DNA of 64,000 nucleotides, taken from positions 186,001 through 250,000 of the IMG/VR virus record IMGVR_UViG_3300023257_000007; one strand, given 5' to 3'. Below, piece by piece: positions 31,421 to 45,159 of the stretch. The notes beneath the pieces are model-generated. The model had not been told where the DNA came from. It did no database searches and saw only the letters and a list, made by a program, of their open reading frames with translations. Every line of letters begins with the position of its first letter. Position 1 is the stretch's first letter. The position numbers were made by a program, and so were the translations under genes.

Positions 31421-31440
31421 TTGCTTTCCTTATCTTTGTA

Positions 31441-32013
31441 ATGAATAAAAATTATAATGAGATGGAAAATTATTTTAAAATTGAACATGGAAGAAAGGTT
31501 GAGACATACACACCTAAAGATACATATGTATTAACATGGAATGAAAGACATGGTGATGCTGATCAAAGTATGCCTACATCTATGACTATACACAGTATGG
31601 ATGAGTTATGGTTCATGTTATGGTTTAGTAAGTGGTTAGATAGATACAGACAGTATAGTGACTTAGATGAGTATAGTAAGGTACTTAATAAGTATAGTAA
31701 GGAGTTATTGGGTAGTAGTTGGTATATAACTGATTGGTGTAGTGATGTGTATGATCATGATTGTATATATTCTAGTTGTTATTGTGGTGTGGATGCCATG
31801 AAGTTATATTATTATGATGAGCATGGTGTTAAGTATGAAGAGGAGATTGATGGTAGTACATATATATCTTTAGTGAAGATGGGATATAAGTTAGATTGTT
31901 GGTTCATTGATAAGTATCCACATATAGCTAATGAGTTACAGGGTATGATATGTGATGCTGCATTGGAAGATAAGAAGGATGTTATTGAGGCTAATAAAAT
32001 GGGGTTGATATGA
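31441..32013 (+). CDS. KMGLL-tag protein, GDAD/YYYD family
   Basis: Likely start 31441 after TATCTTTG promoter; ends IEANKMGLI. Confidence 0.8.
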   Translation: MNKNYNEMENYFKIEHGRKVETYTPKDTYVLTWNERHGDADQSMPTSMTIHSMDELWFMLWFSKWLDRYRQYSDLDEYSKVLNKYSKELLGSSWYITDWCSDVYDHDCIYSSCYCGVDAMKLYYYDEHGVKYEEEIDGSTYISLVKMGYKLDCWFIDKYPHIANELQGMICDAALEDKKDVIEANKMGLI

Positions 32014-32342
32014 TAGATAAGAATATAGTTATAGTATCGTATAGTAAAGAGGAGTTTAATTATGTATTGAATCTATTTAAATCTAGGGAGTTCAGTAGGT
32101 CTACGATTGATTCGTATCTACGTTACGTTAATGATGATGGTCATTATAATGATTATGTATATCCTATTGCATTAATTGTGAGGTTTAAATTAATGTCAGC
32201 AACGTGGCAGTATAAAGATATGTGGGATCATATTAATGATTTATTAGATAGGGGTGAGGTTGATAGTGTTATTGATTGTAAAGATTTCAAAGAGATGGGT
32301 GGTGATAATTATATTGAAGGTATTAAATTAGGTTTACTTTAA
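32010..32342 (+). CDS. KMGLL-tag family protein
   Basis: Ends IEGIKLGLL. Confidence 0.8.
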   Translation: MIDKNIVIVSYSKEEFNYVLNLFKSREFSRSTIDSYLRYVNDDGHYNDYVYPIALIVRFKLMSATWQYKDMWDHINDLLDRGEVDSVIDCKDFKEMGGDNYIEGIKLGLL

Positions 32343-32371
32343 AGTTTAGAAGGTATTCCTTATCTTTGTAT
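32341..32371 (+). promoter_or_regulatory. 31-bp repeated sigma-A promoter unit AAAGTTTAGAAGGTATTCC[GT]T[AG]TCTTTGTAT, copy 1
   Basis: Near-identical copies at 34574, 35324, 39812; contains the TAnnTTTG -7 element. Confidence 0.85.
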
Positions 32372-32414
32372 TGAATATAATTTAAAGAATAGAAAATGAT
32401 AAAAGGAATAAGTA

Positions 32415-32732
32415 ATGACATATAAGGTATTGATTAAGGTTCGTAATGAATCTGAATGGATATCATGTTGTGATATGTTGTATAGTCATGGTTATCGATG
32501 GCAAGACAATTGTATGGACTCAAAGAAGATACATGGATATAAGTTGATAAGTGAAGGTGATATATATTTAGTTATATATAATCATACTGACCCTCATCAT
32601 CATGATGATCGTTTATTTTATAATACTAATGTTAATGTTGATATTTATGGGCCGGATGTTATTATAATTAATTATGTTGAAGGTATGGATTTACATGAGA
32701 TAATAGAAGTTAATAAATTGGGATTAATATGA
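32415..32732 (+). CDS. KMGLL-tag protein, subfamily A
   Basis: IKVRNESEWISCC.MLYSHGY.W; ends IEVNKLGLI. Confidence 0.8.
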   Translation: MTYKVLIKVRNESEWISCCDMLYSHGYRWQDNCMDSKKIHGYKLISEGDIYLVIYNHTDPHHHDDRLFYNTNVNVDIYGPDVIIINYVEGMDLHEIIEVNKLGLI

Positions 32733-33064
32733 TAGTATTTAGTAAAGATATAAAGAAAATAAATATTAAGGTTCGTAATGAATCTGAATGGGTATCATGT
32801 TGCAATATGTTGTATAGTCATGGTTATCATTGGAATGTTGAGTCTGATTTTATGGAGATATATTCTGAATGTTTAGAAACTGCTAAGGAATATATTAAGA
32901 CTTATGCAATAAATGATGGTATATATTTAGTTGTTTATAATGATAATAGTGGACGGTTATATTATAATTATAAATATAAGACTGATGGTATAATAAATCT
33001 TGATTGGTATGATGGTATGGATTTACATGAGATAAATGAAGCTAATAAATTGGGGTTAATATGA
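32729..33064 (+). CDS. KMGLL-tag protein, subfamily A
   Basis: Close tandem paralog of 32415; ends NEANKLGLI. Confidence 0.8.
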   Translation: MIVFSKDIKKINIKVRNESEWVSCCNMLYSHGYHWNVESDFMEIYSECLETAKEYIKTYAINDGIYLVVYNDNSGRLYYNYKYKTDGIINLDWYDGMDLHEINEANKLGLI

Positions 33065-33366
33065 AAGAGAAGATATACATAATATTAAATAATATAGATG
33101 ATTGGATTAATTGTTGTAATCAATTAGACAATGAGGGATATTTTTGGGCAAGAAGTAGTGACTCATATAAAGATAAATATCATAAATGTAAAACTTTCGG
33201 TAATCCTGAAAATTATATAGTAATAGGTCATAATGAGTATGATGATAATCGTTTATATTATGGTAATATATATAATGATAAGAAGTTTGATGGTATTATT
33301 TTATATTGGGATGCTGATGTAGATTTAGAAAGTTATTTTGCAGGTTTAAAAATGGGATTATTATAA
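33061..33366 (+). CDS. KMGLL-tag protein, subfamily A (distant)
   Basis: W..CC..L...GYFW; ends FAGLKMGLL. Confidence 0.8.
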   Translation: MKEKIYIILNNIDDWINCCNQLDNEGYFWARSSDSYKDKYHKCKTFGNPENYIVIGHNEYDDNRLYYGNIYNDKKFDGIILYWDADVDLESYFAGLKMGLL

Positions 33367-33476
33367 TAATATTTTCATGTTTGACCAGGGAGAATTTAGG
33401 TTGGAGGAAAGGGGATATTTTTATTTGGTGAAGGTTTGTTGTGTATTTGTGTATAAATTAAAATGTAAAAAAGATT

Positions 33477-33857
33477 ATGATAAAATGGATTAATATAAGG
33501 CTGGAAGGTTATGGTAAAGGTAAAGGTAAAGGTAAAGGTAAGAAGAAACTGAATAAGATGGTTATGCGTAAATTGTTACATCAAATTGATTGTAAGGTTG
33601 GTTTTCGTATTAAGGATGGTGGATGGAAACCAGTTTTAAATAGTTTAAAAGAATATAAGCATTATAAATATATATGGATTGCTATATGTCCTTTTGGTAA
33701 AGATATGGCTGCGGATTATCATGAAAATAAAGAAGAATGGGAGAGTTATAAAGACGGTATTGAGGCGGATGAAGCTGAGGTATGGTTGAGTTGGGAAGAG
33801 TTTATGGATTTAGATATTCAGATGATTGTTAATGGTTCTAAAATGAATTTATTATGA
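33477..33857 (+). CDS. KMGLL-tag protein with (GK)5 microsatellite
   Basis: (GGTAAA)4 at 33513-33536; ends VNGSKMNLL. Confidence 0.75.
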   Translation: MIKWINIRLEGYGKGKGKGKGKKKLNKMVMRKLLHQIDCKVGFRIKDGGWKPVLNSLKEYKHYKYIWIAICPFGKDMAADYHENKEEWESYKDGIEADEAEVWLSWEEFMDLDIQMIVNGSKMNLL

Positions 33858-34246
33858 AAGATATAAAGTGGATAAATATAATGTTAGACTGGGATAAGTT
33901 TAAGTGGGAACAATTCCATGATGTTGTTGATTATTATAAAGAGTTATTTCCTAAATTAGATTGGACAACTGTTCAAACTGAGATACAGATACATGATAAA
34001 ATTCGAAATGAATCTGTTTTTGATATTTTAGGTTTATCTATATGTTTGGAACATGATAGTAATGATTTTAATATTAATAATTGTGAAAATACTATAAATA
34101 ATTGGCATCCTGTTATATTTAAGTATGGTATTGGTGATGATTTATATGACAAGCAAACTGGTATTGAAATAATTGTTAAATATAGTAAAGATTTCCGTGA
34201 AGAGATTGAGTTTTATTTAGAGGGTTCTAAAATGGGTTTATTATGA
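33854..34246 (+). CDS. KMGLL-tag protein, subfamily E
   Basis: WINI..DWD.F.W similar to 60161; ends LEGSKMGLL. Confidence 0.8.
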   Translation: MKDIKWINIMLDWDKFKWEQFHDVVDYYKELFPKLDWTTVQTEIQIHDKIRNESVFDILGLSICLEHDSNDFNINNCENTINNWHPVIFKYGIGDDLYDKQTGIEIIVKYSKDFREEIEFYLEGSKMGLL

Positions 34247-34575
34247 AAAAAACAATAATATTTTTACATAACAATAAGGATTTGGGCAACTTGTTCATGT
34301 ATTTACATGTTATTGGATGCAAATGGTCTAGTGGTAGACCTATTATAATAGATAGTGAAATACAAAGATTTAATTTATCTTGTTCTAGATCTAAATCTGT
34401 TGCAATTATCGTTGATGATGGTAGTCTTACTTATGTATCAAATAAGAAAGATATTGTTTATAGTTATATATCTGGTGATAAATTTAAATATTATGATCAT
34501 TATGAGTATGTAGATTTTGATAAGGAGTTTGATATTGATGTAACTATTAATGGTAATAAGATGGGATTACTTTAA
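34243..34575 (+). CDS. KMGLL-tag protein, subfamily B
   Basis: YLH.IG.KW, YDHYEY; ends INGNKMGLL. Confidence 0.8.
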   Translation: MKKTIIFLHNNKDLGNLFMYLHVIGCKWSSGRPIIIDSEIQRFNLSCSRSKSVAIIVDDGSLTYVSNKKDIVYSYISGDKFKYYDHYEYVDFDKEFDIDVTINGNKMGLL

Positions 34576-34604
34576 AGTTTAGAAGGTATTCCGTGTCTTT
34601 GTAT
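34574..34604 (+). promoter_or_regulatory. 31-bp repeated promoter unit, copy 2
   Basis: Overlaps the stop of the tagged gene; SD AGGAGG downstream. Confidence 0.8.
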
Positions 34605-34627
34605 TATAATTAAAGGAGGAAACAAAA

Positions 34628-34963
34628 ATGAAAATGATAATATATGCACATAATGACGAAGATATTTATAAGTTATCAACTTATTTACATTATATTGGAA
34701 TTAAATGGCAAACTGAAATTTTTATTATGAATGATGGTGAAATGACAATAGATTGTAATAGAGCTGAATCTAAATCTATTGCATTTTGTGTTAAAAATAA
34801 TCGTGTGTCATATATGAATGATGGTGGTTCTTTTGGTGGTGATGTTTATAATTTTTTCAAAAGGCAACCATATGAATGTTATGACCATTATGAGTATATT
34901 GAATTTGATAAGGAGTTTGGTGTTGATATGGTTTTAGAATCAATAAAGATGGGTTTATTATGA
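34628..34963 (+). CDS. KMGLL-tag protein, subfamily B
   Basis: Ends LESIKMGLL. Confidence 0.8.
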   Translation: MKMIIYAHNDEDIYKLSTYLHYIGIKWQTEIFIMNDGEMTIDCNRAESKSIAFCVKNNRVSYMNDGGSFGGDVYNFFKRQPYECYDHYEYIEFDKEFGVDMVLESIKMGLL

Positions 34964-35325
34964 AAAAAACAATAATATATGTACATAGTGATGAGGATAT
35001 GATTAATTTATTAAGTTATTTACATTTTGTTGGAGTTACATGGCATGGCTCTGCTATTATAAAAGATGATGATAGTTCCGATAATTTTTTTAATGCCGAT
35101 GCCAGATATATAGATATTAGTTGTAAAAAAACGGGAACTGTTGGATTTTGTATTGATCAAGATGATTATATTACATATATGGATGATGGTACTTTTAAAG
35201 GCGAGAATGTTTATGAATATTTCGGTAGAGATTTTATGGAGTATGATCATTATGAGTATGATGAATATGTTGAAAAGTTTGATATTGAACCACTCATAAA
35301 TGGAATAAAGATGGGTTTACTTTAA
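34960..35325 (+). CDS. KMGLL-tag protein, subfamily B
   Basis: Ends INGIKMGLL. Confidence 0.8.
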   Translation: MKKTIIYVHSDEDMINLLSYLHFVGVTWHGSAIIKDDDSSDNFFNADARYIDISCKKTGTVGFCIDQDDYITYMDDGTFKGENVYEYFGRDFMEYDHYEYDEYVEKFDIEPLINGIKMGLL

Positions 35326-35354
35326 AGTTTAGAAGGTATTCCGTATCTTTGTAT
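35324..35354 (+). promoter_or_regulatory. 31-bp repeated promoter unit, copy 3
   Basis: Overlaps the stop of the tagged gene. Confidence 0.85.
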
Positions 35355-35377
35355 TATAATTAAAAAGGAGAAGAAAA

Positions 35378-35632
35378 ATGAAAAAGAAACAAAATAAAAA
35401 AGAAGAGAGTAAATATCAATACAGAAGTGATACTGCTGTTAGGGTTGAAGAAACTGAATATAGTGTAAATGAGTATGACGAATGGGATCGCATAGTATTT
35501 TATTTATGGAAGAAGAGTGGTTATTGGTCTGTGAATGTTTTTGCTCCTGTAACTGATGGTAAAAGGGTTTCATTAGAACCTTTACAAGTAATTCATAAGT
35601 ATTGGACATCTTATAATAAATTATCAATATGA
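35378..35632 (+). CDS. Hypothetical protein
   Basis: 84 aa with promoter and AAGGAG upstream. Confidence 0.75.
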   Translation: MKKKQNKKEESKYQYRSDTAVRVEETEYSVNEYDEWDRIVFYLWKKSGYWSVNVFAPVTDGKRVSLEPLQVIHKYWTSYNKLSI

Positions 35633-35895
35633 AAAGATTAAATATATTTGTAAGAAGTGGATTACAGCAAACGTTGTTTCTACATTATTTATATACTAAT
35701 GGTTATAGTTATAAAGATAGAAAGGATCTTTATTGGAAATTTACTAATGGTTCAGGTGCTATTGTGGTTAATGTAATTGATAAAATAATATTAGGTGGTA
35801 ACACAGGTTGGTTTGCAACACAATCACATATGAATGTAAAAGAATTTGTTGATAAGGCGTGGGAATTTGAAAGTATGAGGATTGGTGTATTATGA
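35629..35895 (+). CDS. KMGLL-tag variant protein
   Basis: YLYTNGYSY; ends FESMRIGVL. Confidence 0.75.
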   Translation: MKRLNIFVRSGLQQTLFLHYLYTNGYSYKDRKDLYWKFTNGSGAIVVNVIDKIILGGNTGWFATQSHMNVKEFVDKAWEFESMRIGVL

Positions 35896-36131
35896 TTAAG
35901 GAATATCATATATGTATTATAAATAAAAAGGAGAAAAAAATGCTAACAATATTAACAATATTATTAATATGGAATCAATTTAGTGGTTGGTTTAGAAAGA
36001 TGTTTTGTAAAATTGGTTTACACACATGGATTAAAGTCTATTCACATAATGAAAAAGGTTGGCATATAAAGGAAAAGAAATGTAGAATATGTAATAAGGA
36101 GGTAAAAAATGATAAAAATAATAGAAAATAA
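35892..36131 (+). CDS. Small membrane / Cys-His protein
   Basis: FCKIGLHTW...KCRICNK pattern. Confidence 0.65.
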   Translation: MIKEYHICIINKKEKKMLTILTILLIWNQFSGWFRKMFCKIGLHTWIKVYSHNEKGWHIKEKKCRICNKEVKNDKNNRK

Positions 36132-36618
36132 AACACAAACTAAAAGAATTGAACCTTATTATAGGTTAAAATTTAGTTACATGATTGGTGATGCTGATGG
36201 TGACACTACAGAGAAGATTGATATTCCTCTTAACAATCCATATGTCGAAAGAGTTGTTGATGTTTTAAATAATTGTGATACACCTAAAGGTCATTGGGGT
36301 ATGATATTAGACTCTGAACATTTCACTAAGTTATTGAATCAGGGTAAAATGACACAGAGTGATTATAATTTTTGTAAAGTGGTTGTATTTGGTGATGACA
36401 TTGATGAACACATGGAAGAGTTTTTCAGCAAGGAAAGAATTGAGGCTGACAAATTAAAATTATTGGAGATAACTGGCGATGAAAAATCATACGCTTATGA
36501 ATTTGAAGAGGCTTGTATTACTTCGATTGGACATAGTTTCGCAGTTTTTGAAGGTATTGATTTATATTATATTGATGAATATGGAGTAAAACATGAGACC
36601 AAAATAGTTGATGATTAA
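36109..36618 (+). CDS. GDAD/YYYD family protein without tag
   Basis: IGDADGD and LYYIDEYGVKHE shared with 31441 and 52330; TAAGGAGGT SD upstream. Confidence 0.8.
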   Translation: MIKIIENKTQTKRIEPYYRLKFSYMIGDADGDTTEKIDIPLNNPYVERVVDVLNNCDTPKGHWGMILDSEHFTKLLNQGKMTQSDYNFCKVVVFGDDIDEHMEEFFSKERIEADKLKLLEITGDEKSYAYEFEEACITSIGHSFAVFEGIDLYYIDEYGVKHETKIVDD

Positions 36619-36692
36619 AACATTAAAATGGTAAGGAATTTCAGAAGGAGTTCCTTATCTTTGTATTAATATTAATTTAAAGAAGAAATAAA

Positions 36693-36920
36693 ATGATAAA
36701 ATATAAAATAACAGATGAAAAAATTGAAGTAGGCGACATTGTTGCTTATGGAATAACATGGAGAGAGAAACGTGTAAGAAAGCACGGTTATGTACTTGGT
36801 GTTTGGGAAGAATATTGGGATGAGGATTCACAGAAGTTTAGAAATAAGGTTGAATGTGTTGATAAAGATAATCATATAATTCGTAGTGAAGAATGGTTAA
36901 AAAAGGTGGTATTGATATGA
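36693..36920 (+). CDS. Small SH3/KOW-like hypothetical protein
   Basis: EVGDIV...HGYVLGV pattern; own promoter. Confidence 0.65.
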   Translation: MIKYKITDEKIEVGDIVAYGITWREKRVRKHGYVLGVWEEYWDEDSQKFRNKVECVDKDNHIIRSEEWLKKVVLI

Positions 36921-37222
36921 TAAAACGATATTATAAAATAGGAATAGATATTCCTGATAATAAATTTGTTAAGTTGATATCAGATCATTTATATTCTTTG
37001 GGTTATAAATGGTGTAGTGATTTTAGAGACGAATCTTTTTATGATAAAGTAACGAATGAATGTATAAGAAGTAATGTGCGTGGTATTGGTGTTGAATGTA
37101 ATGGTCGCATGAGTTACAATGTTGTTAAAAATCAAACTGAAAAGTGGTATTCTCTTGAAGAATATGTAATAAAATATGATTTAGTGATTGAATATGAAGG
37201 ATTAAAAATGGGTTTATTATGA
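36917..37222 (+). CDS. KMGLL-tag protein, subfamily C
   Basis: HLYSLGYKW, GIGVE..GR.SYNV; ends YEGLKMGLL. Confidence 0.8.
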   Translation: MIKRYYKIGIDIPDNKFVKLISDHLYSLGYKWCSDFRDESFYDKVTNECIRSNVRGIGVECNGRMSYNVVKNQTEKWYSLEEYVIKYDLVIEYEGLKMGLL

Positions 37223-37335
37223 GAAAGAGAAAACGAATCAAGGAAAATATTGACTATTTGTTATTTGGAATGGATTGTGCATTGATAGTATTATTTGTAT
37301 TATTCATAGTATTAATTATAATTTAGGAGGAAAAA

Positions 37336-37686
37336 ATGAGAAAAATATATTTAGCAACAAATTATTTCACAGCGTTAACCCCGCTTGATGATGATAACAA
37401 TTTATTAAAATTAGAAAGAGGTAAAGATCCTGTTATTATTTGTACCCTTGAGAAATATCTGGAAGATGTTGATAACACAATAATCACAGGTAACATATTA
37501 AGATTAGAAATAATTGCAAAAACAGATGATGGTTGGATAATTGAACAAGAATTTATAACACCGGGAATGTTAGAGAGTTTGAATTGTAGAAAGATAAGTC
37601 TTGACTCACAATTTATTGAAACTTTAAATCGAAGCCAGAAAGTGGCTTTAGAGTTAAAGAATATAAATGAAAAATTGTCAAGGTAA
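37336..37686 (+). CDS. Hypothetical protein
   Basis: 116 aa, AGGAGG SD. Confidence 0.75.
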   Translation: MRKIYLATNYFTALTPLDDDNNLLKLERGKDPVIICTLEKYLEDVDNTIITGNILRLEIIAKTDDGWIIEQEFITPGMLESLNCRKISLDSQFIETLNRSQKVALELKNINEKLSR

Positions 37687-37854
37687 ATTTTTTTATTAAG
37701 TAGAATCACCGTATATTTGTATTATACAATTGAGAAGATAGAAAAAGAAGAGAAATAAACAGAATGATTTTTTAATTCAGAATAAAGTTCTTATCTTTGT
37801 ATAGACAAAAACAAGTAAACATAATATTAATTAATTTAAAAAACGAAAAACAAA

Positions 37855-38169
37855 ATGGCAAACAAAAAAGATTTAACAAACGCAATTGCAATAGCTACAG
37901 GCAAAACAAAAAAAGATAGCAAAGAATTAGTAAACGTCATAATGGCATCTATTAAATCTGAATTAAGTAACGGTGAAGGTTCTATCGTAAAATTAGTAAA
38001 CTTTGGAACATTTAAAGTAGTTAATCGAAAAGCAAGAAAAGGAAGAAATCCAAGGACTGGTGAATCAATTGATATCCCTGCAAAGAATGTAGTTAGATTC
38101 AAAGCTGGTAAAGGTCTTAAAGAAGCGGTTGATTATACTGCTGAAGAAAGAGAAGAATTAGGAATATAA
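37855..38169 (+). CDS. hup: HU family DNA-binding protein, copy 1
   Basis: NKKDL..AIA, L.NFGTF.V..RKARKGRNPRTGE.I.IPAK.VV.FK.GK.LKEAV; tail DYTAEEREELGI. Confidence 0.95.
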   Translation: MANKKDLTNAIAIATGKTKKDSKELVNVIMASIKSELSNGEGSIVKLVNFGTFKVVNRKARKGRNPRTGESIDIPAKNVVRFKAGKGLKEAVDYTAEEREELGI

Positions 38170-38192
38170 GAAATAAAACTCCTGAAATATCG

Positions 38193-38219
38193 AAGCCACC
38201 TGGAGAGGTGGCTTTTTTT
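38193..38219 (+). terminator. Intrinsic terminator
   Basis: AAGCCACCT-GGAG-AGGTGGCTT plus T tract. Confidence 0.9.
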
Positions 38220-38246
38220 ATTTGAAAAAATTCCTTATATTTGTAT

Positions 38247-38567
38247 ATGAATAACGAAAAATATATAAGGTTTAAGGTAAAAACTCTATCAGATAGTAAG
38301 AGTATTCAAGAATTTTTATTTTCTTTAGGATATATGTGGTGTTCAGAAAATAGGAAAGAATATTATTATATGAATTTTGAAACGTCTGATATTTTATTAT
38401 GTCTTGAGAGTGACTTTAATCCTAATATAGATCATATTTTTCATGGTGATGTAGAGATATTAAATTATGATAAAAGATGGATGGATAAGATAATAAAATC
38501 TTATGATATGAGTAATTATAAAGATTTTATTCAATATAAAAATGCAAAACAACTGGGATTAATTTAA
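38247..38567 (+). CDS. KMGLL-tag protein, subfamily D
   Basis: IQEFLFSLGY.W; ends KNAKQLGLI. Confidence 0.8.
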   Translation: MNNEKYIRFKVKTLSDSKSIQEFLFSLGYMWCSENRKEYYYMNFETSDILLCLESDFNPNIDHIFHGDVEILNYDKRWMDKIIKSYDMSNYKDFIQYKNAKQLGLI

Positions 38568-38597
38568 TATTAAGAACAAACTCCGTATCTTTACACT

Positions 38598-38903
38598 ATG
38601 AAAAAACATGAAAAATTTATATTATTTAAGGTTGATACTTCAAGGGAAAGTAAGGAAATTCAAGAATTTTTGTTTTCTTTAGGTTATTCTTGGCGTGGAG
38701 ATAATAATATGGAATATTTCTCTGTTGAAATTGGGGCTTATATTTTATTATGTGTTGATAGTAATAATATTAAGAGCAAAAATTGTATTTTTTATGGAAA
38801 TGATAAAATGCAATATGATCAAGAACTTATAAAATCTTATAACATGAATAATTATAAAGATTCTTTATGTTTTATAGAATCATTTAAATTGGGATTATTT
38901 TAA
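38598..38903 (+). CDS. KMGLL-tag protein, subfamily D
   Basis: Paralog of 38247; ends IESFKLGLF. Confidence 0.8.
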   Translation: MKKHEKFILFKVDTSRESKEIQEFLFSLGYSWRGDNNMEYFSVEIGAYILLCVDSNNIKSKNCIFYGNDKMQYDQELIKSYNMNNYKDSLCFIESFKLGLF

Positions 38904-38936
38904 AATTGAGAACAAACTCCGTATCTTTACATAGTT

Positions 38937-38991
38937 AAAGGGCGGAGAATTTTTATAGGTTCTGGGAGAGTAGACTCCAACTTGCGATATA
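38937..38991 (+). ncRNA. Five-copy small RNA candidate, copy A
   Basis: AAGGGCGGAG...GAGAGTAGACTCCAACTTGCGATATA directly after a TATCTTTA promoter; no ORF follows. Confidence 0.6.
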
Positions 38992-39042
38992 TTTTTTTTA
39001 ACACAATTTTTATTTCTTAGAAGTAATCCGTATCTTTGTTAT

Positions 39043-39474
39043 ATGAAAATGAAAGTATTATATATTAAAGCTGAAAACATGAAAGATGGTGATTTTGACA
39101 TTATGTTAAAATTTGTTAATAATAATAAAAATTTAGATTATTATTTAACAGGTATAAATATGGGGGGTATTATGAGAACATTTATATGTATAGCCGTAAA
39201 TGATGATAATTATAATGAGGTTAAAGAAAAATTATTCTCTAAATATAATACACCATCACATATTACTGATTTTCAAAATTATGAAGATTATAAATATCCC
39301 TATTTATCAATTGAAATATCAATGGAAAATGAACATGCAGATCATTTAACTATTCATCCTTTGAATGATGATGATGTAGATGTTAAAAATTTTGAAATAA
39401 TTTATAGTAATATTGATGACATATTTGATGATATTGATATGCATATAACTACAAAAAAACTTGGTTTATCTTAA
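39043..39474 (+). CDS. KMGLL-tag variant protein
   Basis: Ends ITTKKLGLS. Confidence 0.75.
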   Translation: MKMKVLYIKAENMKDGDFDIMLKFVNNNKNLDYYLTGINMGGIMRTFICIAVNDDNYNEVKEKLFSKYNTPSHITDFQNYEDYKYPYLSIEISMENEHADHLTIHPLNDDDVDVKNFEIIYSNIDDIFDDIDMHITTKKLGLS

Positions 39475-39489
39475 CTAAAAAAAATAATT

Positions 39490-39810
39490 ATGAGAAAATT
39501 TAATTGTATTAAAATAGAAAATGAAGAACATTTAAATGAATGTTATAAAAAGATAATTGATCTTAAAACACATTATCCATATAACACTTTTGTTGATAGA
39601 TTTATTATGATAAAGGGTTATTGTATTGGTTTTGAAATAGAAGAAATAGAAGAAGGAAGATTAATTTTAACATTTTTAACTGATAATGATCTTCAACGAT
39701 TTGATGAATCAAATGAATTAGCTTTTAATTGTAATTATTTTAATGATATTGATTCTTTTGTTGAATATCATAAGATTTATTTTGATTGTAGATCATTAGG
39801 GGTTTTATAA
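39490..39810 (+). CDS. KMGLL-tag variant protein
   Basis: Ends FDCRSLGVL. Confidence 0.75.
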   Translation: MRKFNCIKIENEEHLNECYKKIIDLKTHYPYNTFVDRFIMIKGYCIGFEIEEIEEGRLILTFLTDNDLQRFDESNELAFNCNYFNDIDSFVEYHKIYFDCRSLGVL

Positions 39811-39811
39811 G

Positions 39812-39842
39812 AAAGTTTAGAAGGTATTCCGTATCTTTGTAT
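39812..39842 (+). promoter_or_regulatory. 31-bp repeated promoter unit, copy 4
   Basis: Identical core to copy 3; drives the SprT-like gene. Confidence 0.85.
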
Positions 39843-39863
39843 AAATATTAAAATAATATAATT

Positions 39864-40325
39864 ATGGAATTAGATAAAGCAAGAATAAAAATGAGAGAAT
39901 TGTTATCAAAACATGGTCTTGATAATTGGAGTTTTGATTTTGATAGAGCAGTTAGACGTTTAGGTCAATGTGTTTGGAAAAAGAATAGTATCATGACTCG
40001 AAAAATTACTATGTCTAGAATTATGACTGAAAGTAGAACTGATAAAGAAGTTATTAATACAATGTTACATGAAATAGCACACGCAATAGATTTTGAAACA
40101 AGGGGTAGAAGTGCTCATGATGATGTTTGGAGATCAATTGCATTGAGTATTGGTTGTGATGGTAATAGATCTAGTAATGTTGATGTTGAGGTTTCAGAAA
40201 AGAATTATAAGTGGTTGGCTATATGTCCAGAGCATGGTGTTTTGGGTGGATGGCAAAGAAAACCAAAAGATAATAAAATGTGTAAAAAATGTAAAAGTAA
40301 AATCATAATAAAGGAAAATAAATAA
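39864..40325 (+). CDS. SprT-like zinc metallopeptidase
   Basis: RRLGQC, TMLHEIAHA (HExxH), H...W...A..IGC, C-terminal Cys cluster. Confidence 0.88.
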   Translation: MELDKARIKMRELLSKHGLDNWSFDFDRAVRRLGQCVWKKNSIMTRKITMSRIMTESRTDKEVINTMLHEIAHAIDFETRGRSAHDDVWRSIALSIGCDGNRSSNVDVEVSEKNYKWLAICPEHGVLGGWQRKPKDNKMCKKCKSKIIIKENK

Positions 40326-40326
40326 C

Positions 40327-41154
40327 ATGAAAATAAAAGAAATAATAAGAAAAATATATGATAAAACCGGACATGGATATACTGCTACGGCTATTAGTGT
40401 TTTAAAAAAATCTGGTTTGATGGGTGATAAAACACATCAAAAGATTAAGAACATTGTTGAGAATGAAATTCAAAGATATGAAAAAGAATATTTTGAAAAA
40501 TATAAGTCTTATATTAGTGAGTATAGATATGAATCACCAACTATGATTTTATCAATAATGTATATTGATGGTTTTAAAGGAAAATATACTGATTCTTATA
40601 AGAAGATTCAGAAAGAGATTCAAAGAATTGACACATCAGAATTAAAGTCATATAAATCTTTAATAAAGAAAGCTAAATCTACTGATCATTTGCTAAGTAA
40701 GATATCCCATTATAAAAGAGCATTATCATTTCGAGGGGATAAAAAAATTGAAGAGAAATTGAAAGATTTAGAGGAGGATTTTCACTCAGATCAGATTATA
40801 GAGGATGAGAAGCAATTTTCAGAGAATACTATTCAATTAAAAGATTCCTCTATAATCAAAATTTATCTTGATCCGAATAACAGAAATACTTTGATGATGG
40901 AACAAGAACAAGAAGGTAAAAAAGGTTTTAGGTTAGTTAATCATTTTGCAGCTATACCACCATTGAAAGAAACTACTGACATATTTTGGATTGGTGAAAG
41001 AACTTCAAAAGCAACTGGTTATAAACATAATTCAGAGGCTTTAATAATAATGAGAGATGAAAATGATACAATAAGAATATATTATAAAGGAAGTTTATTA
41101 ATAGAAAATTATTGTGAAGAAGAATTAAAAAAAATTATAAATAAAATTAAATAA
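40327..41154 (+). CDS. Hypothetical protein
   Basis: 275-aa ORF. Confidence 0.8.
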   Translation: MKIKEIIRKIYDKTGHGYTATAISVLKKSGLMGDKTHQKIKNIVENEIQRYEKEYFEKYKSYISEYRYESPTMILSIMYIDGFKGKYTDSYKKIQKEIQRIDTSELKSYKSLIKKAKSTDHLLSKISHYKRALSFRGDKKIEEKLKDLEEDFHSDQIIEDEKQFSENTIQLKDSSIIKIYLDPNNRNTLMMEQEQEGKKGFRLVNHFAAIPPLKETTDIFWIGERTSKATGYKHNSEALIIMRDENDTIRIYYKGSLLIENYCEEELKKIINKIK

Positions 41155-41162
41155 AACAAATT

Positions 41163-41369
41163 ATGTGGATAACAATTGGAATAATAATAGGATTAGTAAT
41201 AGGTGGTTGGTTAGGATATCAGGCTTGTATGGCAAAATATAGACCTACAGAATTACTTAAATTAGCAAAAATACAAACTGAAATGATTTCAGGTGAAATA
41301 ACACCGGAAAAGGCTTTAAAAGAGATACATCAAATTGAAATTGAACACCCTGAATTGAAAAAGAAATGA
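41163..41369 (+). CDS. Small membrane protein
   Basis: N-terminal TM helix with GxxxG. Confidence 0.7.
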   Translation: MWITIGIIIGLVIGGWLGYQACMAKYRPTELLKLAKIQTEMISGEITPEKALKEIHQIEIEHPELKKK

Positions 41370-41689
41370 AAAAGTATAAATTTATAACAGAAAGTGATTA
41401 TGGTGATTTGCAACTCATCATTTATTTTGAAGATAGAGATGAATCTATTAAAGTTCAAAATGAAATGATAGAACGTGGTTATTTAAAAATCACAGAGACA
41501 AATACACAAGATAAAGATTTATATCCATTTTCTGTTTGGTTTGAACCTAAAAATAAAATAATGAATGGTGGTCAAAAGAATTCTGAATATATGTTAAGGT
41601 ATGGTAGATCATTACATTCTGATATATTTATGGAGTATATAGATAATCTGGAAGCATTATTTGAGTCTTTAAAAATGGGTTTGTTATAA
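41366..41689 (+). CDS. KMGLL-tag family protein
   Basis: Ends FESLKMGLL. Confidence 0.8.
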   Translation: MKKYKFITESDYGDLQLIIYFEDRDESIKVQNEMIERGYLKITETNTQDKDLYPFSVWFEPKNKIMNGGQKNSEYMLRYGRSLHSDIFMEYIDNLEALFESLKMGLL

Positions 41690-41725
41690 TTTTTAACTTT
41701 TGAACAAAGTCCGTATATTTGTATT

Positions 41726-41809
41726 ATCATTAACGGTTACATGTGTCCAACGACACCTTGCAAGAGCGTAATAAGCGATGTCCAGTGTTCGATTCCCTGG
41801 TAGTGGTAC
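41726..41809 (+). tRNA. Degenerate tRNA-like element (pseudo-tRNA, possibly GCA anticodon)
   Basis: Own promoter; ATCATTA/TAGTGGT acceptor-like pairing; GTTCGATTC T-loop; poor D and anticodon stems. Confidence 0.35.
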
Positions 41810-41929
41810 AAAAATCACAAAGAAAACAAAACACAAGTATATTTTTTATTTAGGAAGGAAGTCCGTATATTTGTATAACAATAAAGAAAAATAATAATAT
41901 TAATTTAAAATCTATAGGAGGATATAAAA

Positions 41930-42166
41930 ATGGCAAGAGAAAAATTAGGTAAAGTAGTAGGACAAGTTGGTGGATTCAGAATCAGAATGGAAATGAAAAA
42001 TATCCAAAAAATTGAAACAGACAGATTTGGTAGAAGAAAAGTAACTGAATCTAAAAGATGTTTCACCGGAAAATACGGAGTTTACGCAGGTAGAAACCTT
42101 TGTAAAAATGGTCTAACCAAAGAAAAAGCAATTCAATACGCAAAATCGTATAACAAAGAAAATTAG
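41930..42166 (+). CDS. Small basic hypothetical protein
   Basis: Own promoter and AGGAGG SD. Confidence 0.8.
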   Translation: MAREKLGKVVGQVGGFRIRMEMKNIQKIETDRFGRRKVTESKRCFTGKYGVYAGRNLCKNGLTKEKAIQYAKSYNKEN

Positions 42167-42249
42167 AGCTCCCAGTTGGAGATTCGTTCCTCAAGGTTGA
42201 AAGGTCTTGAGGGACGTCTTAATTATAATAATAATTATTAAAAATATAT

Positions 42250-42322
42250 GTATCATTAGCTCAGTTGGTAGAGCTTCTGCCTTTTAAGCAGAAAGTCCAG
42301 GGTTCGAGTCCCCGATGGTATA
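42250..42322 (+). tRNA. tRNA-Lys(UUU)
   Basis: TAGCTCAGTTGGTAGAGC D arm; TCTGC-CTTTTAA-GCAGA; GGTTCGAGTCC. Confidence 0.9.
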
Positions 42323-42357
42323 CACAATGTAACCTCCTTTCACATTGAATTAGTACT

Positions 42358-42387
42358 TCCCCACCCGAACAGGTGGGGATTTTTTTT
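42358..42387 (+). terminator. Intrinsic terminator
   Basis: TCCCCACC/GGTGGGGA stem plus T tract. Confidence 0.85.
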
Positions 42388-42443
42388 ATTAGAAGGATTG
42401 TTGTATCTTTGTATTAGTATAAATTTTAAAAAAGGAGAAAAAA

Positions 42444-42599
42444 ATGAATGAATTAACAAAATTTATTGAATATTTAGAAAAAACTGATATTGAGGATTTT
42501 AAACATCCTGAACAGATTAAAGAATATATTATTGGTATATGTAAATCAATTAAAAAAGATATTATTGATTTTCATCCAATGATGGAGGATACGGAATAG
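42444..42599 (+). CDS. 51-aa microprotein (below the track cutoff)
   Basis: Promoter, AAGGAG, MNELTK...; leader duplicated at 42624-42678. Confidence 0.6.
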   Translation: MNELTKFIEYLEKTDIEDFKHPEQIKEYIIGICKSIKKDIIDFHPMMEDTE

Positions 42600-42665
42600 G
42601 GTTTTTTAAATCAGAACAAATTCCGTATCTTTGTATTAATATAAATTTTAAAAAAGGAGAAAAAA

Positions 42666-42767
42666 ATGAATGAATTAAACAAAATAGCAATAAATTTTAT
42701 AAATATTATAAACACAATTAGTATAGACGCATTTACATTATATATGTATATTGGGTTTTTCATATAG
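42666..42767 (+). CDS. 33-aa hydrophobic microprotein
   Basis: Same promoter/RBS/MNEL leader as 42444. Confidence 0.45.
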   Translation: MNELNKIAINFINIINTISIDAFTLYMYIGFFI

Positions 42768-42778
42768 GAGAAATTAAA

Positions 42779-43012
42779 ATGATAGTAAGTATAAGAATAA
42801 ATAACTGGGAAGATTATTTCAAAATTAAGAAATATCTAATATCACTCAATTTTAAGTGGTTTAGGACAACCTATAGCCCAAAATTTGATTTAATTATACA
42901 CTTATCAAGTGGTAAATTATCATATGATCCAAGAATGAATAAAAATGATAATTATGAATATGCTACTGTAAAAGAAATTATAAGTAAAGGATTCGGATCT
43001 TTTATTTTTTAG
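42779..43012 (+). CDS. Small protein with the family N-terminal fold but no tag
   Basis: IRINNWEDY..I..YLISLNFKW; ends GFGSFIF. Confidence 0.7.
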   Translation: MIVSIRINNWEDYFKIKKYLISLNFKWFRTTYSPKFDLIIHLSSGKLSYDPRMNKNDNYEYATVKEIISKGFGSFIF

Positions 43013-43035
43013 AAGATAATCCGTATATTTGTATT

Positions 43036-43611
43036 GACACAAGCAGAAACAGGATTGGTCGAATTGCCTGTGTTCTTCGGAACAAACTCGTTACCTATGC
43101 TTTTTTCCTAGAGGTTGGGCGAATTAATAACAATAAACTAGGCGCCGGACAATGCGATATTGTATGATTTTTAAGTAGTGAAATAAGAACTAACTTGGCT
43201 CTCTAACCAGATAGAGTGACTTTCGTAAGATGTTTGAAAGAAAACTATCTAGACTTTTATGTTTCAAGATAACCGGTAATGGAATTAAAAAGTTGCTAAC
43301 ACACAACGCGACAAGGCTTTGTCGCGTGAGATAGATATTCAAGGTAGGAGGTATTAGATACACCGTCTGGACTACAAGTTTGGAAATCAACAAAGTGGTG
43401 GGATGCGAGTGGTTGACCAGTGTTAGAATTAAAGAAGCAGGTTCGAATCCTGTGAATATGGATATAGAAAACAAAGGAGGGTTAATATTCGAGATAGAAT
43501 GGCTCTAGCTTCGGCAGAGTATCGCCTCAGAAATTAAATGAACGGCTATGCTAAATAGCTTCAGTACTTTAATCGAGAAGCCCAATAGGAAATTACTATT
43601 GGGCTTTTTTT
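43036..43611 (+). ncRNA. Large (~575 nt) structured non-coding RNA candidate
   Basis: Starts just after a TATATTTG promoter, ends at a strong terminator; GC-richer than flanks; C(UUCG)G hairpins, 9-bp ACGCGACAA/TTGTCGCGT stem, tRNA-like GCAGGTTCGAATCCTGT arm; no long plus-strand ORF. Confidence 0.7.
43578..43611 (+). terminator. Intrinsic terminator
   Basis: AAGCCCAATAG/CTATTGGGCTT 11-bp stem plus T tract. Confidence 0.9.
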
Positions 43612-43642
43612 ATTTGAATAATCTCCGTATATTTGTACTATC

Positions 43643-43696
43643 AAAAGGCGGAGTTTTAAAAGAACCCCGAAGAGTAGACTCCAATTTGCGTTATAT
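43643..43696 (+). ncRNA. Five-copy small RNA candidate, copy B
   Basis: AAAAGGCGGAG...GAAGAGTAGACTCCAATTTGCGTTATAT after a TATATTTG promoter. Confidence 0.6.
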
Positions 43697-43882
43697 ATTA
43701 TATAACATTTTTTAATTCAGAATATTATTAGTATCTTTGTATTATAAATATAAAATTAGAAATTATAATTACATATTTTTTCTCTTTGAAAAAATTGGGA
43801 GGAATTTTTAATTTAAGAAAAATTTCCGTATATTTGTAGTATTAAAATGTTTAGTATAAATTAAATAAAAAACTGAAAAAAT

Positions 43883-44527
43883 ATGGCAAAAGAAAAAAAG
43901 ATTGAAGAAAAAATAGTGGAAAAATTATTAACATCTAAGAAGAAATTAGAAACAGGCAAATGGCTTTATAGAGGATTTGTAGTTGAAAAAAATGGATCAA
44001 AATGGGTGGCTAAAGTTCACGAAGGTTCTAATATTGTTGAAGAAAAATCTGATTCTGTTGTTGATGAATTGATGACATCAGCTAAAAATATTTGTATTAG
44101 TATTGATAAGGTTTTAGGTGATTTAACAGATTCAGAAAAAACTAAACCGAAAAGAGCAATAAAATCAAAAGCATCAAGACTTAAAGATAAAGATGAAAAA
44201 GCTAAATATATTGAAAGAGCGCAAAGAGTAGCTTATGACATTAGAAATGGTTTACAAGTATTATCATTTCTTAATAAGAAAAAATTAAAAGATAATCTTT
44301 TAAGTGATGCTCCGAATATGAGAAAAACATTATCTAATGGTTATAGATTAGGATGGGAAAATGGTTGTTTATATAATGTACCAGAAATAACTGATGAAAT
44401 TAAAGCAATCATAGAAAAGGACAAAGAGTTTATTGAAGAATTAAAAGTGAAACATGAAGATTTAAACATATCATTTGGTATGGAAGATAATAAAATTGAT
44501 ATAGAAGTAACTTATAAAGAAAAATAA
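43883..44527 (+). CDS. Hypothetical protein
   Basis: 214 aa, own promoter and terminator. Confidence 0.8.
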   Translation: MAKEKKIEEKIVEKLLTSKKKLETGKWLYRGFVVEKNGSKWVAKVHEGSNIVEEKSDSVVDELMTSAKNICISIDKVLGDLTDSEKTKPKRAIKSKASRLKDKDEKAKYIERAQRVAYDIRNGLQVLSFLNKKKLKDNLLSDAPNMRKTLSNGYRLGWENGCLYNVPEITDEIKAIIEKDKEFIEELKVKHEDLNISFGMEDNKIDIEVTYKEK

Positions 44528-44545
44528 TCTCAATCTTTTTAATAT

Positions 44546-44575
44546 AAACCCCAGTTAATCGACTGGGGTTTTTTT
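44546..44575 (+). terminator. Intrinsic terminator
   Basis: AAACCCCAGT/ACTGGGGTTT plus T tract. Confidence 0.9.
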
Positions 44576-44634
44576 ATTTTAAATACTTTCCGTATATTTG
44601 TATAACGAAATTAATAATTAAAAAGGAGGAAAAA

Positions 44635-44997
44635 ATGACAACATTATTATTTATAAAAATATTAATAATTATAATGATTTTAGTAATGGGATTTATATCA
44701 GTTAGAATATGGGTTAAGCAAGTTAAATTGTTTAATAAGAGAAATAAAATGATTGCTGATAAAAAATTAAAAACTGAAAACTATATCAAAGAAAGAACTG
44801 AATTCTTTAAGAAAAATATTGATGAGTTTGAAATAGATGAAGTCGTTAAAGAAAAAGCATTTAACTTTGAAGCAATTATATTAGATAAAACAGCAAACAG
44901 TCTTTTTGTTCACACAAAGAAAAGAAAACCAGAAGGAACTGATTGTACAGGATGGTTTTCTATTGATGATTTCAACAGAAGATTTAAAAAACAATAA
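44635..44997 (+). CDS. Membrane-anchored hypothetical protein
   Basis: N-terminal TM; AGGAGG SD. Confidence 0.8.
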   Translation: MTTLLFIKILIIIMILVMGFISVRIWVKQVKLFNKRNKMIADKKLKTENYIKERTEFFKKNIDEFEIDEVVKEKAFNFEAIILDKTANSLFVHTKKRKPEGTDCTGWFSIDDFNRRFKKQ

Positions 44998-45080
44998 TAA
45001 TAATTAAAATTAAAACTAGAAACTATGAAAAATTATGAAATTGAAGATGATAGAGTAATGTTCTAAAAACATTGAAACAT

Positions 45081-45152: not shown

Positions 45153-45159
45153 CTAAATT

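What the first reader, a model, noticed from the sequence alone, without database searches (positions are those of the whole stretch)
32328..39842. Conserved tag-stop-promoter junction suggests cassette-like gene units
Seen: the 31-mer AAAGTTTAGAAGGTATTCCGTATCTTTGTAT recurs at 32341, 34574, 35324 and 39812. In three cases it starts inside the TAA of a tagged gene, giving a ~44-bp shared block (tag codons + CTTTAA + promoter), yet the downstream genes are unrelated (subfamily A, subfamily B, a hypothetical, SprT). Inference: the tag DNA plus next promoter acts as a homology joint that lets new ORFs be swapped in, which resembles an integron but has no integrase or attC.
Basis: partly seen in the sequence, partly recalled or inferred. 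Interest (0 to 1): 0.6.

Follow-up and report, generated by a model that had tools for sequence, protein, structure and literature searches.

The report
Repeated phage promoter abutting gene ends
The repeated 31-base block is one young sub-family of about forty Bacteroidota-type promoters in the small-gene region of a very large Antarctic lake phage. Its copies do recombine with each other in wild populations, but nothing shows it working as an integron-like device for swapping in new genes.

Summary
The 31-mer occurs four times (0-1 mismatch; none expected by chance), and three copies share a 42-base block that starts in the last codons of a gene ending in the K-M/L-G-L-L motif.

The 31-mer is a promoter. 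It carries the Bacteroidota sigma-A -7 box TAnnTTTG and belongs to a class of about 40 sites. Nearly all lie on the + strand, between window positions 31,400 and 54,100, in a phage of at least 434 kb. Where a gene abuts the promoter, its last codon plus stop (CTT TAA) supplies the promoter's upstream T-run. This explains the odd CTT codon (4 of 4 block genes against 1 of 99 other tagged genes).

Promoters follow tagged genes no more often than the base rate. The tag is a peptide motif written in many synonymous forms, so it is a poor DNA "joint".

The four copies are far more alike (92%) than other promoters of the class (59%). Population variants show gene conversion between copies and one unequal crossover between paralogs B1 and B3. 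Four other indels are microhomology events, and no ORF replacement between blocks was seen. No integrase was found; a RecA-like gene is present.

The closest known parallel is the PeSL promoter cassettes of T4-type phages.

The parts
32331..32372 (+). Block copy 1. Last three codons (GGT TTA CTT) and TAA of ORF 32010-32342, then the promoter. The -7 box TATCTTTG is at 32361-32368. The 31-mer runs 32341-32371 with 1 mismatch (CCT for CCG).
34564..34605 (+). Block copy 2, between paralogs B1 (34243-34575) and B2 (34628-34963). The -7 box reads TGTCTTTG at 34594-34601: G replaces the nearly invariant A at -11, so this copy may be a weakened promoter. The 5%-diverged strain L076 has A here.
   Evidence: -7 box consensus from PMC6847099
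35314..35355 (+). Block copy 3, after B3 (34960-35325) and before the 84-aa ORF 35378-35632. It matches the 31-mer exactly. The tag codons AAGATGGG can pair with CCGTATCTT of the -7 box (hairpin z = -3.4).
39812..39842 (+). Block copy 4. It starts 2 bases after the TAA of ORF 39490-39810 (ending RSLGVL) and lies before the SprT-like gene 39864-40325. It matches the 31-mer exactly and shares nothing beyond the 31 bases.
34243..35325 (+). Tandem paralogs B1, B2 and B3 (110, 111 and 121 aa). Gene bodies are 55-76% identical at DNA level. The B1 and B3 tails plus block are 85% identical over 149 bases, and the block itself is 95-100% identical.
35892..36131 (+). Chimeric 79-aa ORF left by an 845-base deletion in the window's lineage. 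It joins 8 codons of gene C2, the remnant of a block (TGTATTATAAATAAAAAGGAG at 35913-35933) read as codons, and the 63-aa gene. Variants L016 and L042-L047 keep C2, a promoter, a 36-aa ORF, a 121-aa tagged ORF and the fifth block.
38556..38597 (+). Second kind of tag-stop-promoter junction (GGA TTA ATT TAA ... CTCCGTATCTTTACAC) after ORF 38247-38567. The stop-to-core spacing is the same 16 bases as in the blocks. The ATG of the next gene (38598) sits at the predicted +1, so the mRNA would be leaderless.
38892..38933 (+). Paralogous junction after ORF 38598-38903 (GGA TTA TTT TAA ... CTCCGTATCTTTACAT). This pair arose by tandem duplication of a gene-plus-promoter unit.
31428..54087 (+). Span that holds most of the roughly 40 promoters of the class. 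The consensus is ttTTTTaatTTtaGAAnaaatTCCGTATaTTTGTAT. Examples have their core at 36653, 37709, 38233, 41711, 42623, 43021, 44590, 48165 and 49849. Several directly follow an intrinsic terminator whose T-tail doubles as the upstream T-run.

Best explanation
The 31-mer is the -33 to -7 part of a promoter read by the sigma-A RNA polymerase of a Bacteroidota host. It belongs to a class of about 40 promoters that drive the small ORFs, tRNAs and short non-coding elements of one + strand region of a phage of at least 434 kb, found in Antarctic saline-lake and marine metagenomes.

Genes here are packed tightly. In several places the promoter begins inside the end of the preceding gene, and the last codon (xTT) plus TAA supplies the TTTAA of the promoter's upstream T-run. 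Since about two thirds of genes in this region end in the K-M/L-G-L-L motif, the preceding gene is usually a tagged one.

The four window copies, plus a fifth in variants, are a young sub-family. The unit (tag end, stop, promoter and, in three copies, the 5'UTR) was copied by local duplication of gene-plus-promoter units. It is kept alike by gene conversion between copies, probably through the phage's RecA-like recombinase or the host's.

As repeats of 31 to about 150 bases, the copies are real substrates for homologous exchange and unequal crossover among neighbouring paralogs. In that they resemble PeSL cassettes of T4-type phages. They are not a dedicated gene-capture system.

Shown here: the repeat, the promoter class consensus, the codon link, the haplotypes and the indels. 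Inferred: promoter activity, the role of the T-run, the direction and agent of conversion.
For: Promoter:
- The TAnnTTTG box is in all copies. The class has about 40 sites scoring above 12 bits against 0 in a shuffled genome.
- Of the 21 strict-core sites, 20 are on the + strand and intergenic.
- The sigma-70 pattern is not enriched: 163 found against 151 expected.
- The literature consensus is -33/-7 TTTG/TANNTTTG with G at -5 (PMC6847099; PMC9723704).
- The ATG sits exactly at the predicted +1 at 38598 and 39043.

Overlap with gene ends:
- The stop lies 16 bases before the core in five junctions.
- CTT TAA ends 3 of 3 block genes, 4 of 4 with L016, against 1 of 99 other tagged genes (p = 2e-5 and 1e-6).

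No special tag-promoter link: 9 of 14 against 17 of 26. After 52 of 102 tags the next start codon overlaps or abuts the stop.

Young sub-family:
- Pairwise identity in -24..-1 is 0.92 among the four copies and 0.59 among 23 other promoters.
- Flanking genes are unrelated.
- Blocks differ between 5%-diverged strains about as much as between copies within one genome. The same G/T site varies in copy 1 and copy 4.

Exchange between copies:
- Haplotypes H2 (L043, L045, L046) and H3 (L042) carry B1/B2-type sequence at the B3 junction.
- L076 carries a UTR like the window's B3-junction UTR at the B1 junction.
- L070 is a B1/B3 hybrid lacking 750 bases.

Recombinases: a RecA-like gene is present. No tyrosine or serine recombinase was found in 434 kb.
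Against: - No RNA data exist for this phage (one search found no RNA runs), so promoter activity and start sites are inferred from sequence alone.
- The full identity of the spacer could instead reflect selection, for example an operator for a phage regulator, rather than recent copying.
- The strain comparison rests on few sites (3 changes in 62 block positions).
- Metagenome contigs could be chimeric at repeats. However, the L070 crossover lies in a 19-base identity, shorter than assembler k-mers.
- The hairpin between tag codons and the -7 box, seen in three of five copies, hints at a function this explanation does not use.
Confidence: 0.6

Rival explanations
1. The conserved unit of tag end, stop and promoter is a preferred site of homologous recombination. 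Whole ORFs are excised, inserted or replaced between blocks, each arriving with its own promoter. This builds the variable small-gene region.
For: - The copies are more alike than the promoter class needs, and they sit between unrelated genes.
- Conversion tracts end inside the block or UTR.
- About 4 of 14 event end-points fall in junction units that cover about 3.5% of the region (binomial p about 1e-3, though the end-points are not independent).
- The 845-base indel carries three ORFs and its right end is in the -7 box of a block.
- The region consists of ORFs without relatives.
- A RecA-like gene is present.
- There is a precedent in T4-type phages (PMC2839356, PMC4122927).
Against: - No block-to-block excision, insertion or replacement was seen among five structural variants in about 20 contigs and 4 runs.
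- The 845-base event is a microhomology (TGTA) deletion that destroyed the block.
- The only homologous deletion crossed over inside paralogous coding sequence, not in the block.
- Only 4-5 copies exist, within 7.5 kb.
- No related genome carrying the block was found for comparison.
Confidence: 0.2
2. The four copies are kept identical by selection because the whole 31-mer, not just the -7 box, is a binding site. It could be an operator or activator site for a phage protein that sets apart one timing class of promoters. Copying and conversion would then play no role in their likeness.
For: - The spacer and the region around -33 (AGTTTAGAAGGTATT) are invariant in the four copies but variable in the class.
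- Several class promoters carry inverted repeats over the TTCCGTATC part (42623 z = -5.2; 36653 z = -3.9). Such repeats are typical of sites for dimeric binding proteins.
Against: - Between strains the blocks change about as fast as their surroundings: 3 of 62 positions against about 5% overall.
- Copy 2 carries a change at a nearly invariant promoter position.
- Conversion haplotypes are seen directly.
- No candidate regulator was identified.
Confidence: 0.12
3. The block acts on RNA. On read-through transcripts, the tag codons and the -7 box region fold into a hairpin that attenuates or processes the upstream message, like the stem-loop half of a PeSL. This pairing would be what ties the tag to the promoter.
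For: - Hairpins fold better than shuffles in copy 3 (z = -3.4 and -3.8), copy 2 (-1.9 and -2.2) and the fifth copy (-2.05).
- Strong stems over the -7 box occur at 42623 and 36653.
Against: - Copies 1 and 4 form no hairpin (z = -0.15 and +0.57).
- The stems are AT-rich and weak (-11 to -14 kcal/mol) and lack a terminator-like T-tail.
- True terminators in the region look quite different.
Confidence: 0.08

Closest known systems
PeSL (promoter-early stem-loop) cassettes of T4-type phages (Arbiol et al. 2010, PMC2839356; Comeau et al. 2014, PMC4122927)
   Same: - It is a repeated intergenic unit: the stop codon of the upstream gene in an AT-rich stretch, a host-type promoter, a Shine-Dalgarno sequence and the start of the next gene.
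- It is concentrated in a region of small genes without relatives.
- Conservation extends over roughly 40-100 bases, enough for homologous exchange.
- Some copies have a stem-loop over the promoter box.
   Different: - The promoter is of the Bacteroidota sigma-A type (TAnnTTTG), not sigma-70.
- The near-identical sub-family has only 4-5 copies, against about 50 PeSLs per genome.
- The stem-loop is weak or absent in the block copies, and no terminator function is evident.
- The unit overlaps the coding end of the upstream gene.
- Indels bounded by two units, replacement of ORFs and mini-circles, which define PeSL-mediated shuffling, were not seen here.
Bacteroidota sigma-A promoters (-33 TTTG / -7 TAnnTTTG)
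   Same: - The -7 box matches in all copies.
- H-H at positions -10 and -9 fits the revised TAHHTTTG consensus.
- The upstream region is AT/T-rich.
- Several start codons sit at the spacing expected for a start site 5 bases after the G.
   Different: - The phage class has extra conserved bases (TTCCG before the box, GAA five bases further up, a T-run near -33) that host promoters are not reported to share.
- Activity was not measured.
Integrons (IntI integrase, attI/attC, promoterless cassettes)
   Same: Only the general picture matches: a row of small, unrelated ORFs separated by a recurring sequence.
   Different: - There is no tyrosine recombinase.
- The repeat is a promoter, not an attC-type folded recombination site.
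- Each unit has its own promoter, whereas integron cassettes share one.
- The observed exchanges are homologous or microhomology events.
Unequal crossover and gene conversion in tandem multigene families
   Same: - The B1/B3 hybrid with loss of the DNA between them is a classic unequal crossover product.
- Patchwise transfer of B1-type sequence into the B3 junction is classic gene conversion.
- Junction repeats are kept more alike than the gene bodies.
   Different: Copies 1 and 4 sit next to genes that are not detectable paralogs of the B family. Paralogy alone therefore does not explain why they carry the same block.

Membership tests
Bacteroidota sigma-A promoter | A -7 box TAnnTTTG (TAHHTTTG), with T-12, A-11, T-8, T-7, T-6 and G-5 nearly invariant | tested here: met
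   TATCTTTG is present in copies 1, 3, 4 and the fifth copy. Copy 2 has TGTCTTTG, with A-11 changed. The consensus comes from PMC6847099 and PMC9723704.
Bacteroidota sigma-A promoter | Upstream (-33) TTTG or AT-rich element about 19 bases before the -7 box | tested here: inconclusive
   TTTA of CTT TAA lies exactly 19 bases upstream of the box. The class consensus has a T-run there and a GAA 8 bases before the box. The literature says the -33 element is weak in flavobacteria.
Bacteroidota sigma-A promoter | Transcription starts about 5 bases after the G of the box | not testable with these tools
   No RNA runs hold this phage. Indirect support: the ATG sits at the predicted +1 at 38598 and 39043.
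PeSL cassette | Strong host-type early promoter repeated in many intergenic sites of a hyperplastic region, upstream of ORFans | tested here: met
   About 40 class promoters lie in window 31.4-54.1 kb. The ORFs there have no Pfam or PHROG family and no relatives. The timing ('early') is inferred, not shown.
PeSL cassette | A stable stem-loop within or beside the promoter that terminates or attenuates upstream transcription | tested here: inconclusive
   Three of five block copies fold better than shuffles (z = -1.9 to -3.8) and two do not. Other class promoters have a true terminator just upstream (38233, 42401, 43625, 44590) or a stem over the box (36653, 42623).
PeSL cassette | Insertions, deletions and replacements between close relatives are bounded by the cassettes | tested here: not met
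   Of five structural variants, one end lies inside a block (SV1), one just 3' of a class promoter (SV3), and one crossover lies 85 bases upstream of the blocks (L070). None is bounded by two blocks and none is a replacement. The sample is small.
PeSL cassette | Mini-circles formed by exchange between neighbouring cassettes | not testable with these tools
   Only contigs were available. The one 'goes back' joint (39851 to 35311, with 32 letters on the shorter side) is explained by the fifth block copy in the SV1 form.
Integron | IntI-type tyrosine recombinase next to the array | tested here: not met
   PF00589 gave no match in G000 or G001, 434 kb in all; the controls were positive. No serine recombinase was found either. 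The genome may be incomplete.
Integron | attC recombination sites at cassette ends, with promoterless cassettes read from one common promoter | tested here: not met
   The recurring sequence is a promoter with the -7 box, each unit has its own, and the folds are weak. No dedicated attC model was run.

The most novel reading that the evidence does not exclude
A giant phage of Bacteroidota has evolved its own counterpart of T4-type PeSLs. The promoter units overlap the conserved ends of a family of more than 100 small genes (C-terminal K-M/L-G-L-L, often N-terminal MKYLKTY). Together with the equally conserved tag-stop-start junctions, they would serve as recombination handles that let the phage shuffle and turn over its small-gene repertoire in the wild.
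Probability: 0.2. Interest if true: 0.55.

Novelty: new member of a known kind. Interest (0 to 1): 0.33.

Why it matters
If the blocks are promoters, they provide the first sequence-level promoter map for the small-gene region of an uncultured phage of at least 434 kb. They also indicate a Bacteroidota host.

The population data show how such a region changes in nature. The changes seen are conversion between repeated regulatory units, unequal crossover between tandem paralogs, and microhomology deletions that fuse or remove small genes.

This is ordinary phage genome dynamics, and a parallel to the PeSL model outside the T4 group. It is not a new recombination system. The more unusual feature nearby is the large gene family with conserved termini.

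Tried and rejected
- **Search for relatives with the block.** Megablast against phage records found nothing. Pattern scans of IMG/VR found only the same phage under another record, 100% identical. A looser promoter pattern gave single hits in unrelated contigs with no tagged genes. The 275-aa neighbour protein found only itself. The metagenome scan gave only strains of this phage plus L077, a chance match inside a coding region of a GC-rich phage.
- **Protein word searches.** B3 and a 9-member family alignment found only this phage's own proteins. Atlas look-alikes gave nothing usable.
- **One superfamily for all tagged proteins.** This was not supported. With the tag removed, BLAST gives 43 clusters from 59 proteins, and profile iteration does not join families A and B.
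- **Apparent two alleles of B2 (109 and 111 aa).** These were only gene-calling differences.
- **Short-sided joints in read laying.** Joints such as 35349 to 35913 and 35913/35916 to 39820 are mapping effects of the fifth block copy, not new rearrangements.
- **Depth dip over B2-B3 in runs X8 and X10.** It fits the L070 deletion, but contig depth is not evidence.
- **Literature search for the tag peptide.** It found nothing relevant.
- **Four-copy element after some promoters.** It has no Rfam match and no conserved fold.
- **Not used.** The large representative protein search, structure prediction and complex prediction were not run, because no claim here rests on them.

Full report
**1. The observation**

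The 31-mer occurs at 32341, 34574, 35324 and 39812 on the + strand, with 1, 1, 0 and 0 mismatches. Shuffles of the window give none.

The first three copies start at the second base of the TAA of ORFs 32010-32342, 34243-34575 and 34960-35325, which end IKLGLL, NKMGLL and IKMGLL. These three share a 42-base block, GGT/GGA TTA CTT TAA followed by the 31-mer.

The fourth copy begins two bases after the stop of ORF 39490-39810 (RSLGVL) and shares only the 31 bases.

The genes downstream are unrelated to one another: family A, family B, an 84-aa ORF without a family, and a SprT-like protein.

**2. Where it lies**

The window is part of a 344.6-kb IMG/VR virus record with 25% G+C. A second record is 100% identical over 259 kb and extends it. 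The joined sequence is 433,697 bases, so the phage genome is at least that long.

The DNA occurs in salt-lake and marine metagenomes.

Window positions 28,000-54,000 hold many small + strand ORFs, nine tRNA genes, an HU-like gene and a SprT-like gene.

**3. What the 31-mer is**

Its 3' part, TATCTTTG, is the -7 box TAnnTTTG of Bacteroidota sigma-A promoters (PMC6847099; PMC9723704).

The core CCKTRTMTTTGTA occurs 20 times on the + strand between window 31428 and 51641, and once on the - strand elsewhere. A weight matrix built from these sites finds about 40 sites in the genome and none in a shuffled genome. The consensus is ttTTTTaatTTtaGAAnaaatTCCGTATaTTTGTAT.

The sites are intergenic and co-oriented with the genes. 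They lie 29-67 bases before start codons, or before tRNAs and short non-coding elements.

At 38598 and 39043 the ATG sits exactly where a start site 5 bases after the G would fall, which would give leaderless messages.

Sigma-70-type patterns are not enriched (163 found against 151 expected). Intrinsic terminators are enriched (18 against 2.9), and several directly precede a promoter, so that their T-tail is also the promoter's upstream T-run.

I conclude that the 31-mer is a promoter of this class and that the host is a member of the Bacteroidota. A phage bS21 gene nearby fits phages of that phylum (PMC9723584). No RNA data exist to confirm activity.

**4. Why the block reaches into the gene**

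In five junctions the stop codon ends exactly 16 bases before the core. These are the three blocks and a second pair at 38567 and 38903. In all five the last codon is xTT (CTT, ATT or TTT) followed by TAA. This puts TTTAA where the class consensus has its T-run, 19 bases before the -7 box.

Among 102 tagged ORFs in the 434-kb sequence, the last Leu is TTA in most. CTT TAA occurs four times, and three of those are the block genes. The fifth block, in variants, also has it. Fisher tests give p = 2e-5 and 1e-6.

So part of the shared "tag DNA" is promoter sequence written in the coding frame.

**5. Is the tag tied to the promoter?**

It is not. In window 31-42 kb, promoters follow a tagged gene in 9 of 14 cases, and 17 of 26 genes there are tagged (p = 1).

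After 52 of 102 tags the next start codon overlaps or abuts the stop. Often this forms a junction reading ...KMGL[LIY] stop ATG AAA TAT TTA AAG ACA TAT.

The tag is a peptide motif: 23 KMGLL ends are written in 16 different 15-mers. Tag DNA is therefore not a good general homology arm.

**6. The four copies are a young sub-family**

In the 24 bases before the core they are 92% alike. Twenty-three other promoters of the class are 59% alike, and the four against the others are 53% alike.

Their flanks are unrelated, except that B1 and B3 are paralogs: gene bodies 55-76% identical, 149 bases around the block 85%, the block 95-100%.

In a strain about 5% diverged (L076), copies 1 and 2 differ from the window at 1 and 2 of 31 positions. 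Blocks therefore change between strains about as fast as their surroundings, yet copies within a genome stay nearly identical.

The same G/T position varies in copy 1 (L076) and in copy 4 (run X10).

This pattern fits recent copying or continuing conversion better than position-by-position selection, but the numbers are small.

**7. Population variants**

Contigs carrying B3 or its neighbours come from about 20 assemblies.

- **(a) Haplotypes at the B3-block-84aa junction.**
  - The window type has its own 5'UTR.
  - L043, L045, L046 and L070 have the 5'UTR of the B1-block-B2 junction after an unchanged block.
  - L042 has, in addition, the B1-type gene tail.
  - L076 has, at the B1 junction, a 5'UTR like the window's B3 junction.
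  - These are conversion tracts whose ends lie in the block or UTR, or in a 19-base identity in the gene tails.
- **(b) L070.** It has a B1/B3 hybrid gene and lacks 750 bases (B1 tail, block 2, B2 and the B3 body). The crossover is in that 19-base identity, 85 bases before the blocks. Because the hybrid is 94% B1-like and then about 100% B3-like, it is a recent recombinant, not an ancestor.
- **(c) SV1.** Window 35913/35916 lacks 845 bases that L016 and L042-L047 keep. These hold gene C2 (a paralog of 35629-35895), a promoter, a 36-aa ORF, a 121-aa tagged ORF and the fifth block.
  - The window keeps 8 codons of C2 and the 3' end of the block, so the window form is a deletion.
  - Its ends share only TGTA, and its right end is inside the -7 box.
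- **(d) SV2, SV3 and SV4.**
  - SV2: 36975-37284 is absent, with microhomology TGATA.
  - SV3: about 39053-39672 is absent, with the left end just after the promoter at 39028.
  - SV4: a 133-base insertion lies before tRNA-Lys.
  - All three are microhomology events. SV2 and SV3 recur in other runs.

No variant has a different ORF between two intact blocks.

**8. Recombination machinery**

No tyrosine or serine recombinase is found in the 434 kb. A RecA-like gene is present.

**9. Stem-loops**

In copies 2, 3 and 5 the tag codons AAGATGGG can pair with CCGTATCTT of the -7 box (z = -1.9 to -3.8). Copies 1 and 4 form no such hairpin. Stronger inverted repeats cover the box at 36653 and 42623. 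Their meaning is open.

**10. Comparison with known systems**

There, repeated units of stop codon, AT-rich stretch, host-type promoter, stem-loop, Shine-Dalgarno sequence and start codon lie in regions of ORFans. They mediate insertions, deletions and replacements, and they form mini-circles (PMC2839356; PMC4122927).

The present unit shares the architecture and the setting. It does not, in the data available, show the defining recombination outcomes. Integron features are absent.

**11. Verdict**

The block is a promoter sub-family that overlaps gene ends in a tightly packed region. The copies recombine with one another, so the "homology joint" reading is partly right in mechanism. There is no evidence that the blocks bring in new ORFs, the link to the tag is incidental, and the concept is already known from T4-type phages. 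Interest is modest.

The large gene family with conserved termini around the blocks is the more unusual feature and deserves its own study.

Noticed in passing
window 28404-64000 and beyond (G000:299879-344634; G001 extension): In the joined 434-kb sequence, 102 of 928 ORFs of at least 45 aa end in [EQ][GAS]x[KQN][ML]G[LIV][LIFM]. The motif is written in many synonymous forms, and the protein bodies fall into 43 BLAST clusters. From memory only, the peptide resembles C-terminal sliding-clamp-binding motifs (QLxLF); this was not tested.
   Followed up: partly
for example window 28797, 29463 and 30617; G000:1477, 21254 and 338126; joined sequence 349259-425459: About 47 ORFs start MK[YH]LKTY. 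At more than 25 gene boundaries the C-terminal tag, the stop and this N-terminal motif form one conserved junction (...AAAATGGGATTATATTAAATGAAATATTTAAAGACATAT). This junction is far commoner than tag-stop-promoter.
   Followed up: partly
window 38930-38996, 43636-43700, 51429-51495, 53885-53952: A four-copy element of about 60 bases (AAAGGCGGAG...GAAGAGTAGACTCCAACTTGCG) begins at the predicted start site of four class promoters. It has no Rfam match and no conserved fold.
   Followed up: partly
G000 and G001 (IMGVR_UViG_3300023257_000007): The two virus records overlap by 259,159 bases at 100% identity. Together they give 433,697 bases, so the phage is much larger than either record.
   Followed up: yes
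window 33513-33537 (ORF 33477-33857) and 25773-25820: Repeat-number variation between strains. GGTAAA units encoding a GKGKGK run vary by 6-12 bases, and a 12-base unit (TTCAACTTTAGG) varies by four copies (48 bases).
   Followed up: no
window 34628, 35378, 36109, 37336, 41930 (upstream regions): Strong Shine-Dalgarno-like AAGGAGG sequences precede 7 of 25 starts. The phage's presumed hosts largely lack such sequences, and the phage encodes its own ribosomal protein bS21 (about window 26990-27190, - strand).
   Followed up: no
window 42237-42248 (L042:7021-7153, L075): Some strains carry a 133-base insertion with a 46-aa ORF directly before tRNA-Lys.
   Followed up: partly
window 31214-34694 against L076: In a strain about 5% diverged, the differences come in patches of 6-11 per 100 bases separated by identical stretches. 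Two patches lie just 3' of blocks 1 and 2. This suggests mosaic recombination between strains.
   Followed up: partly
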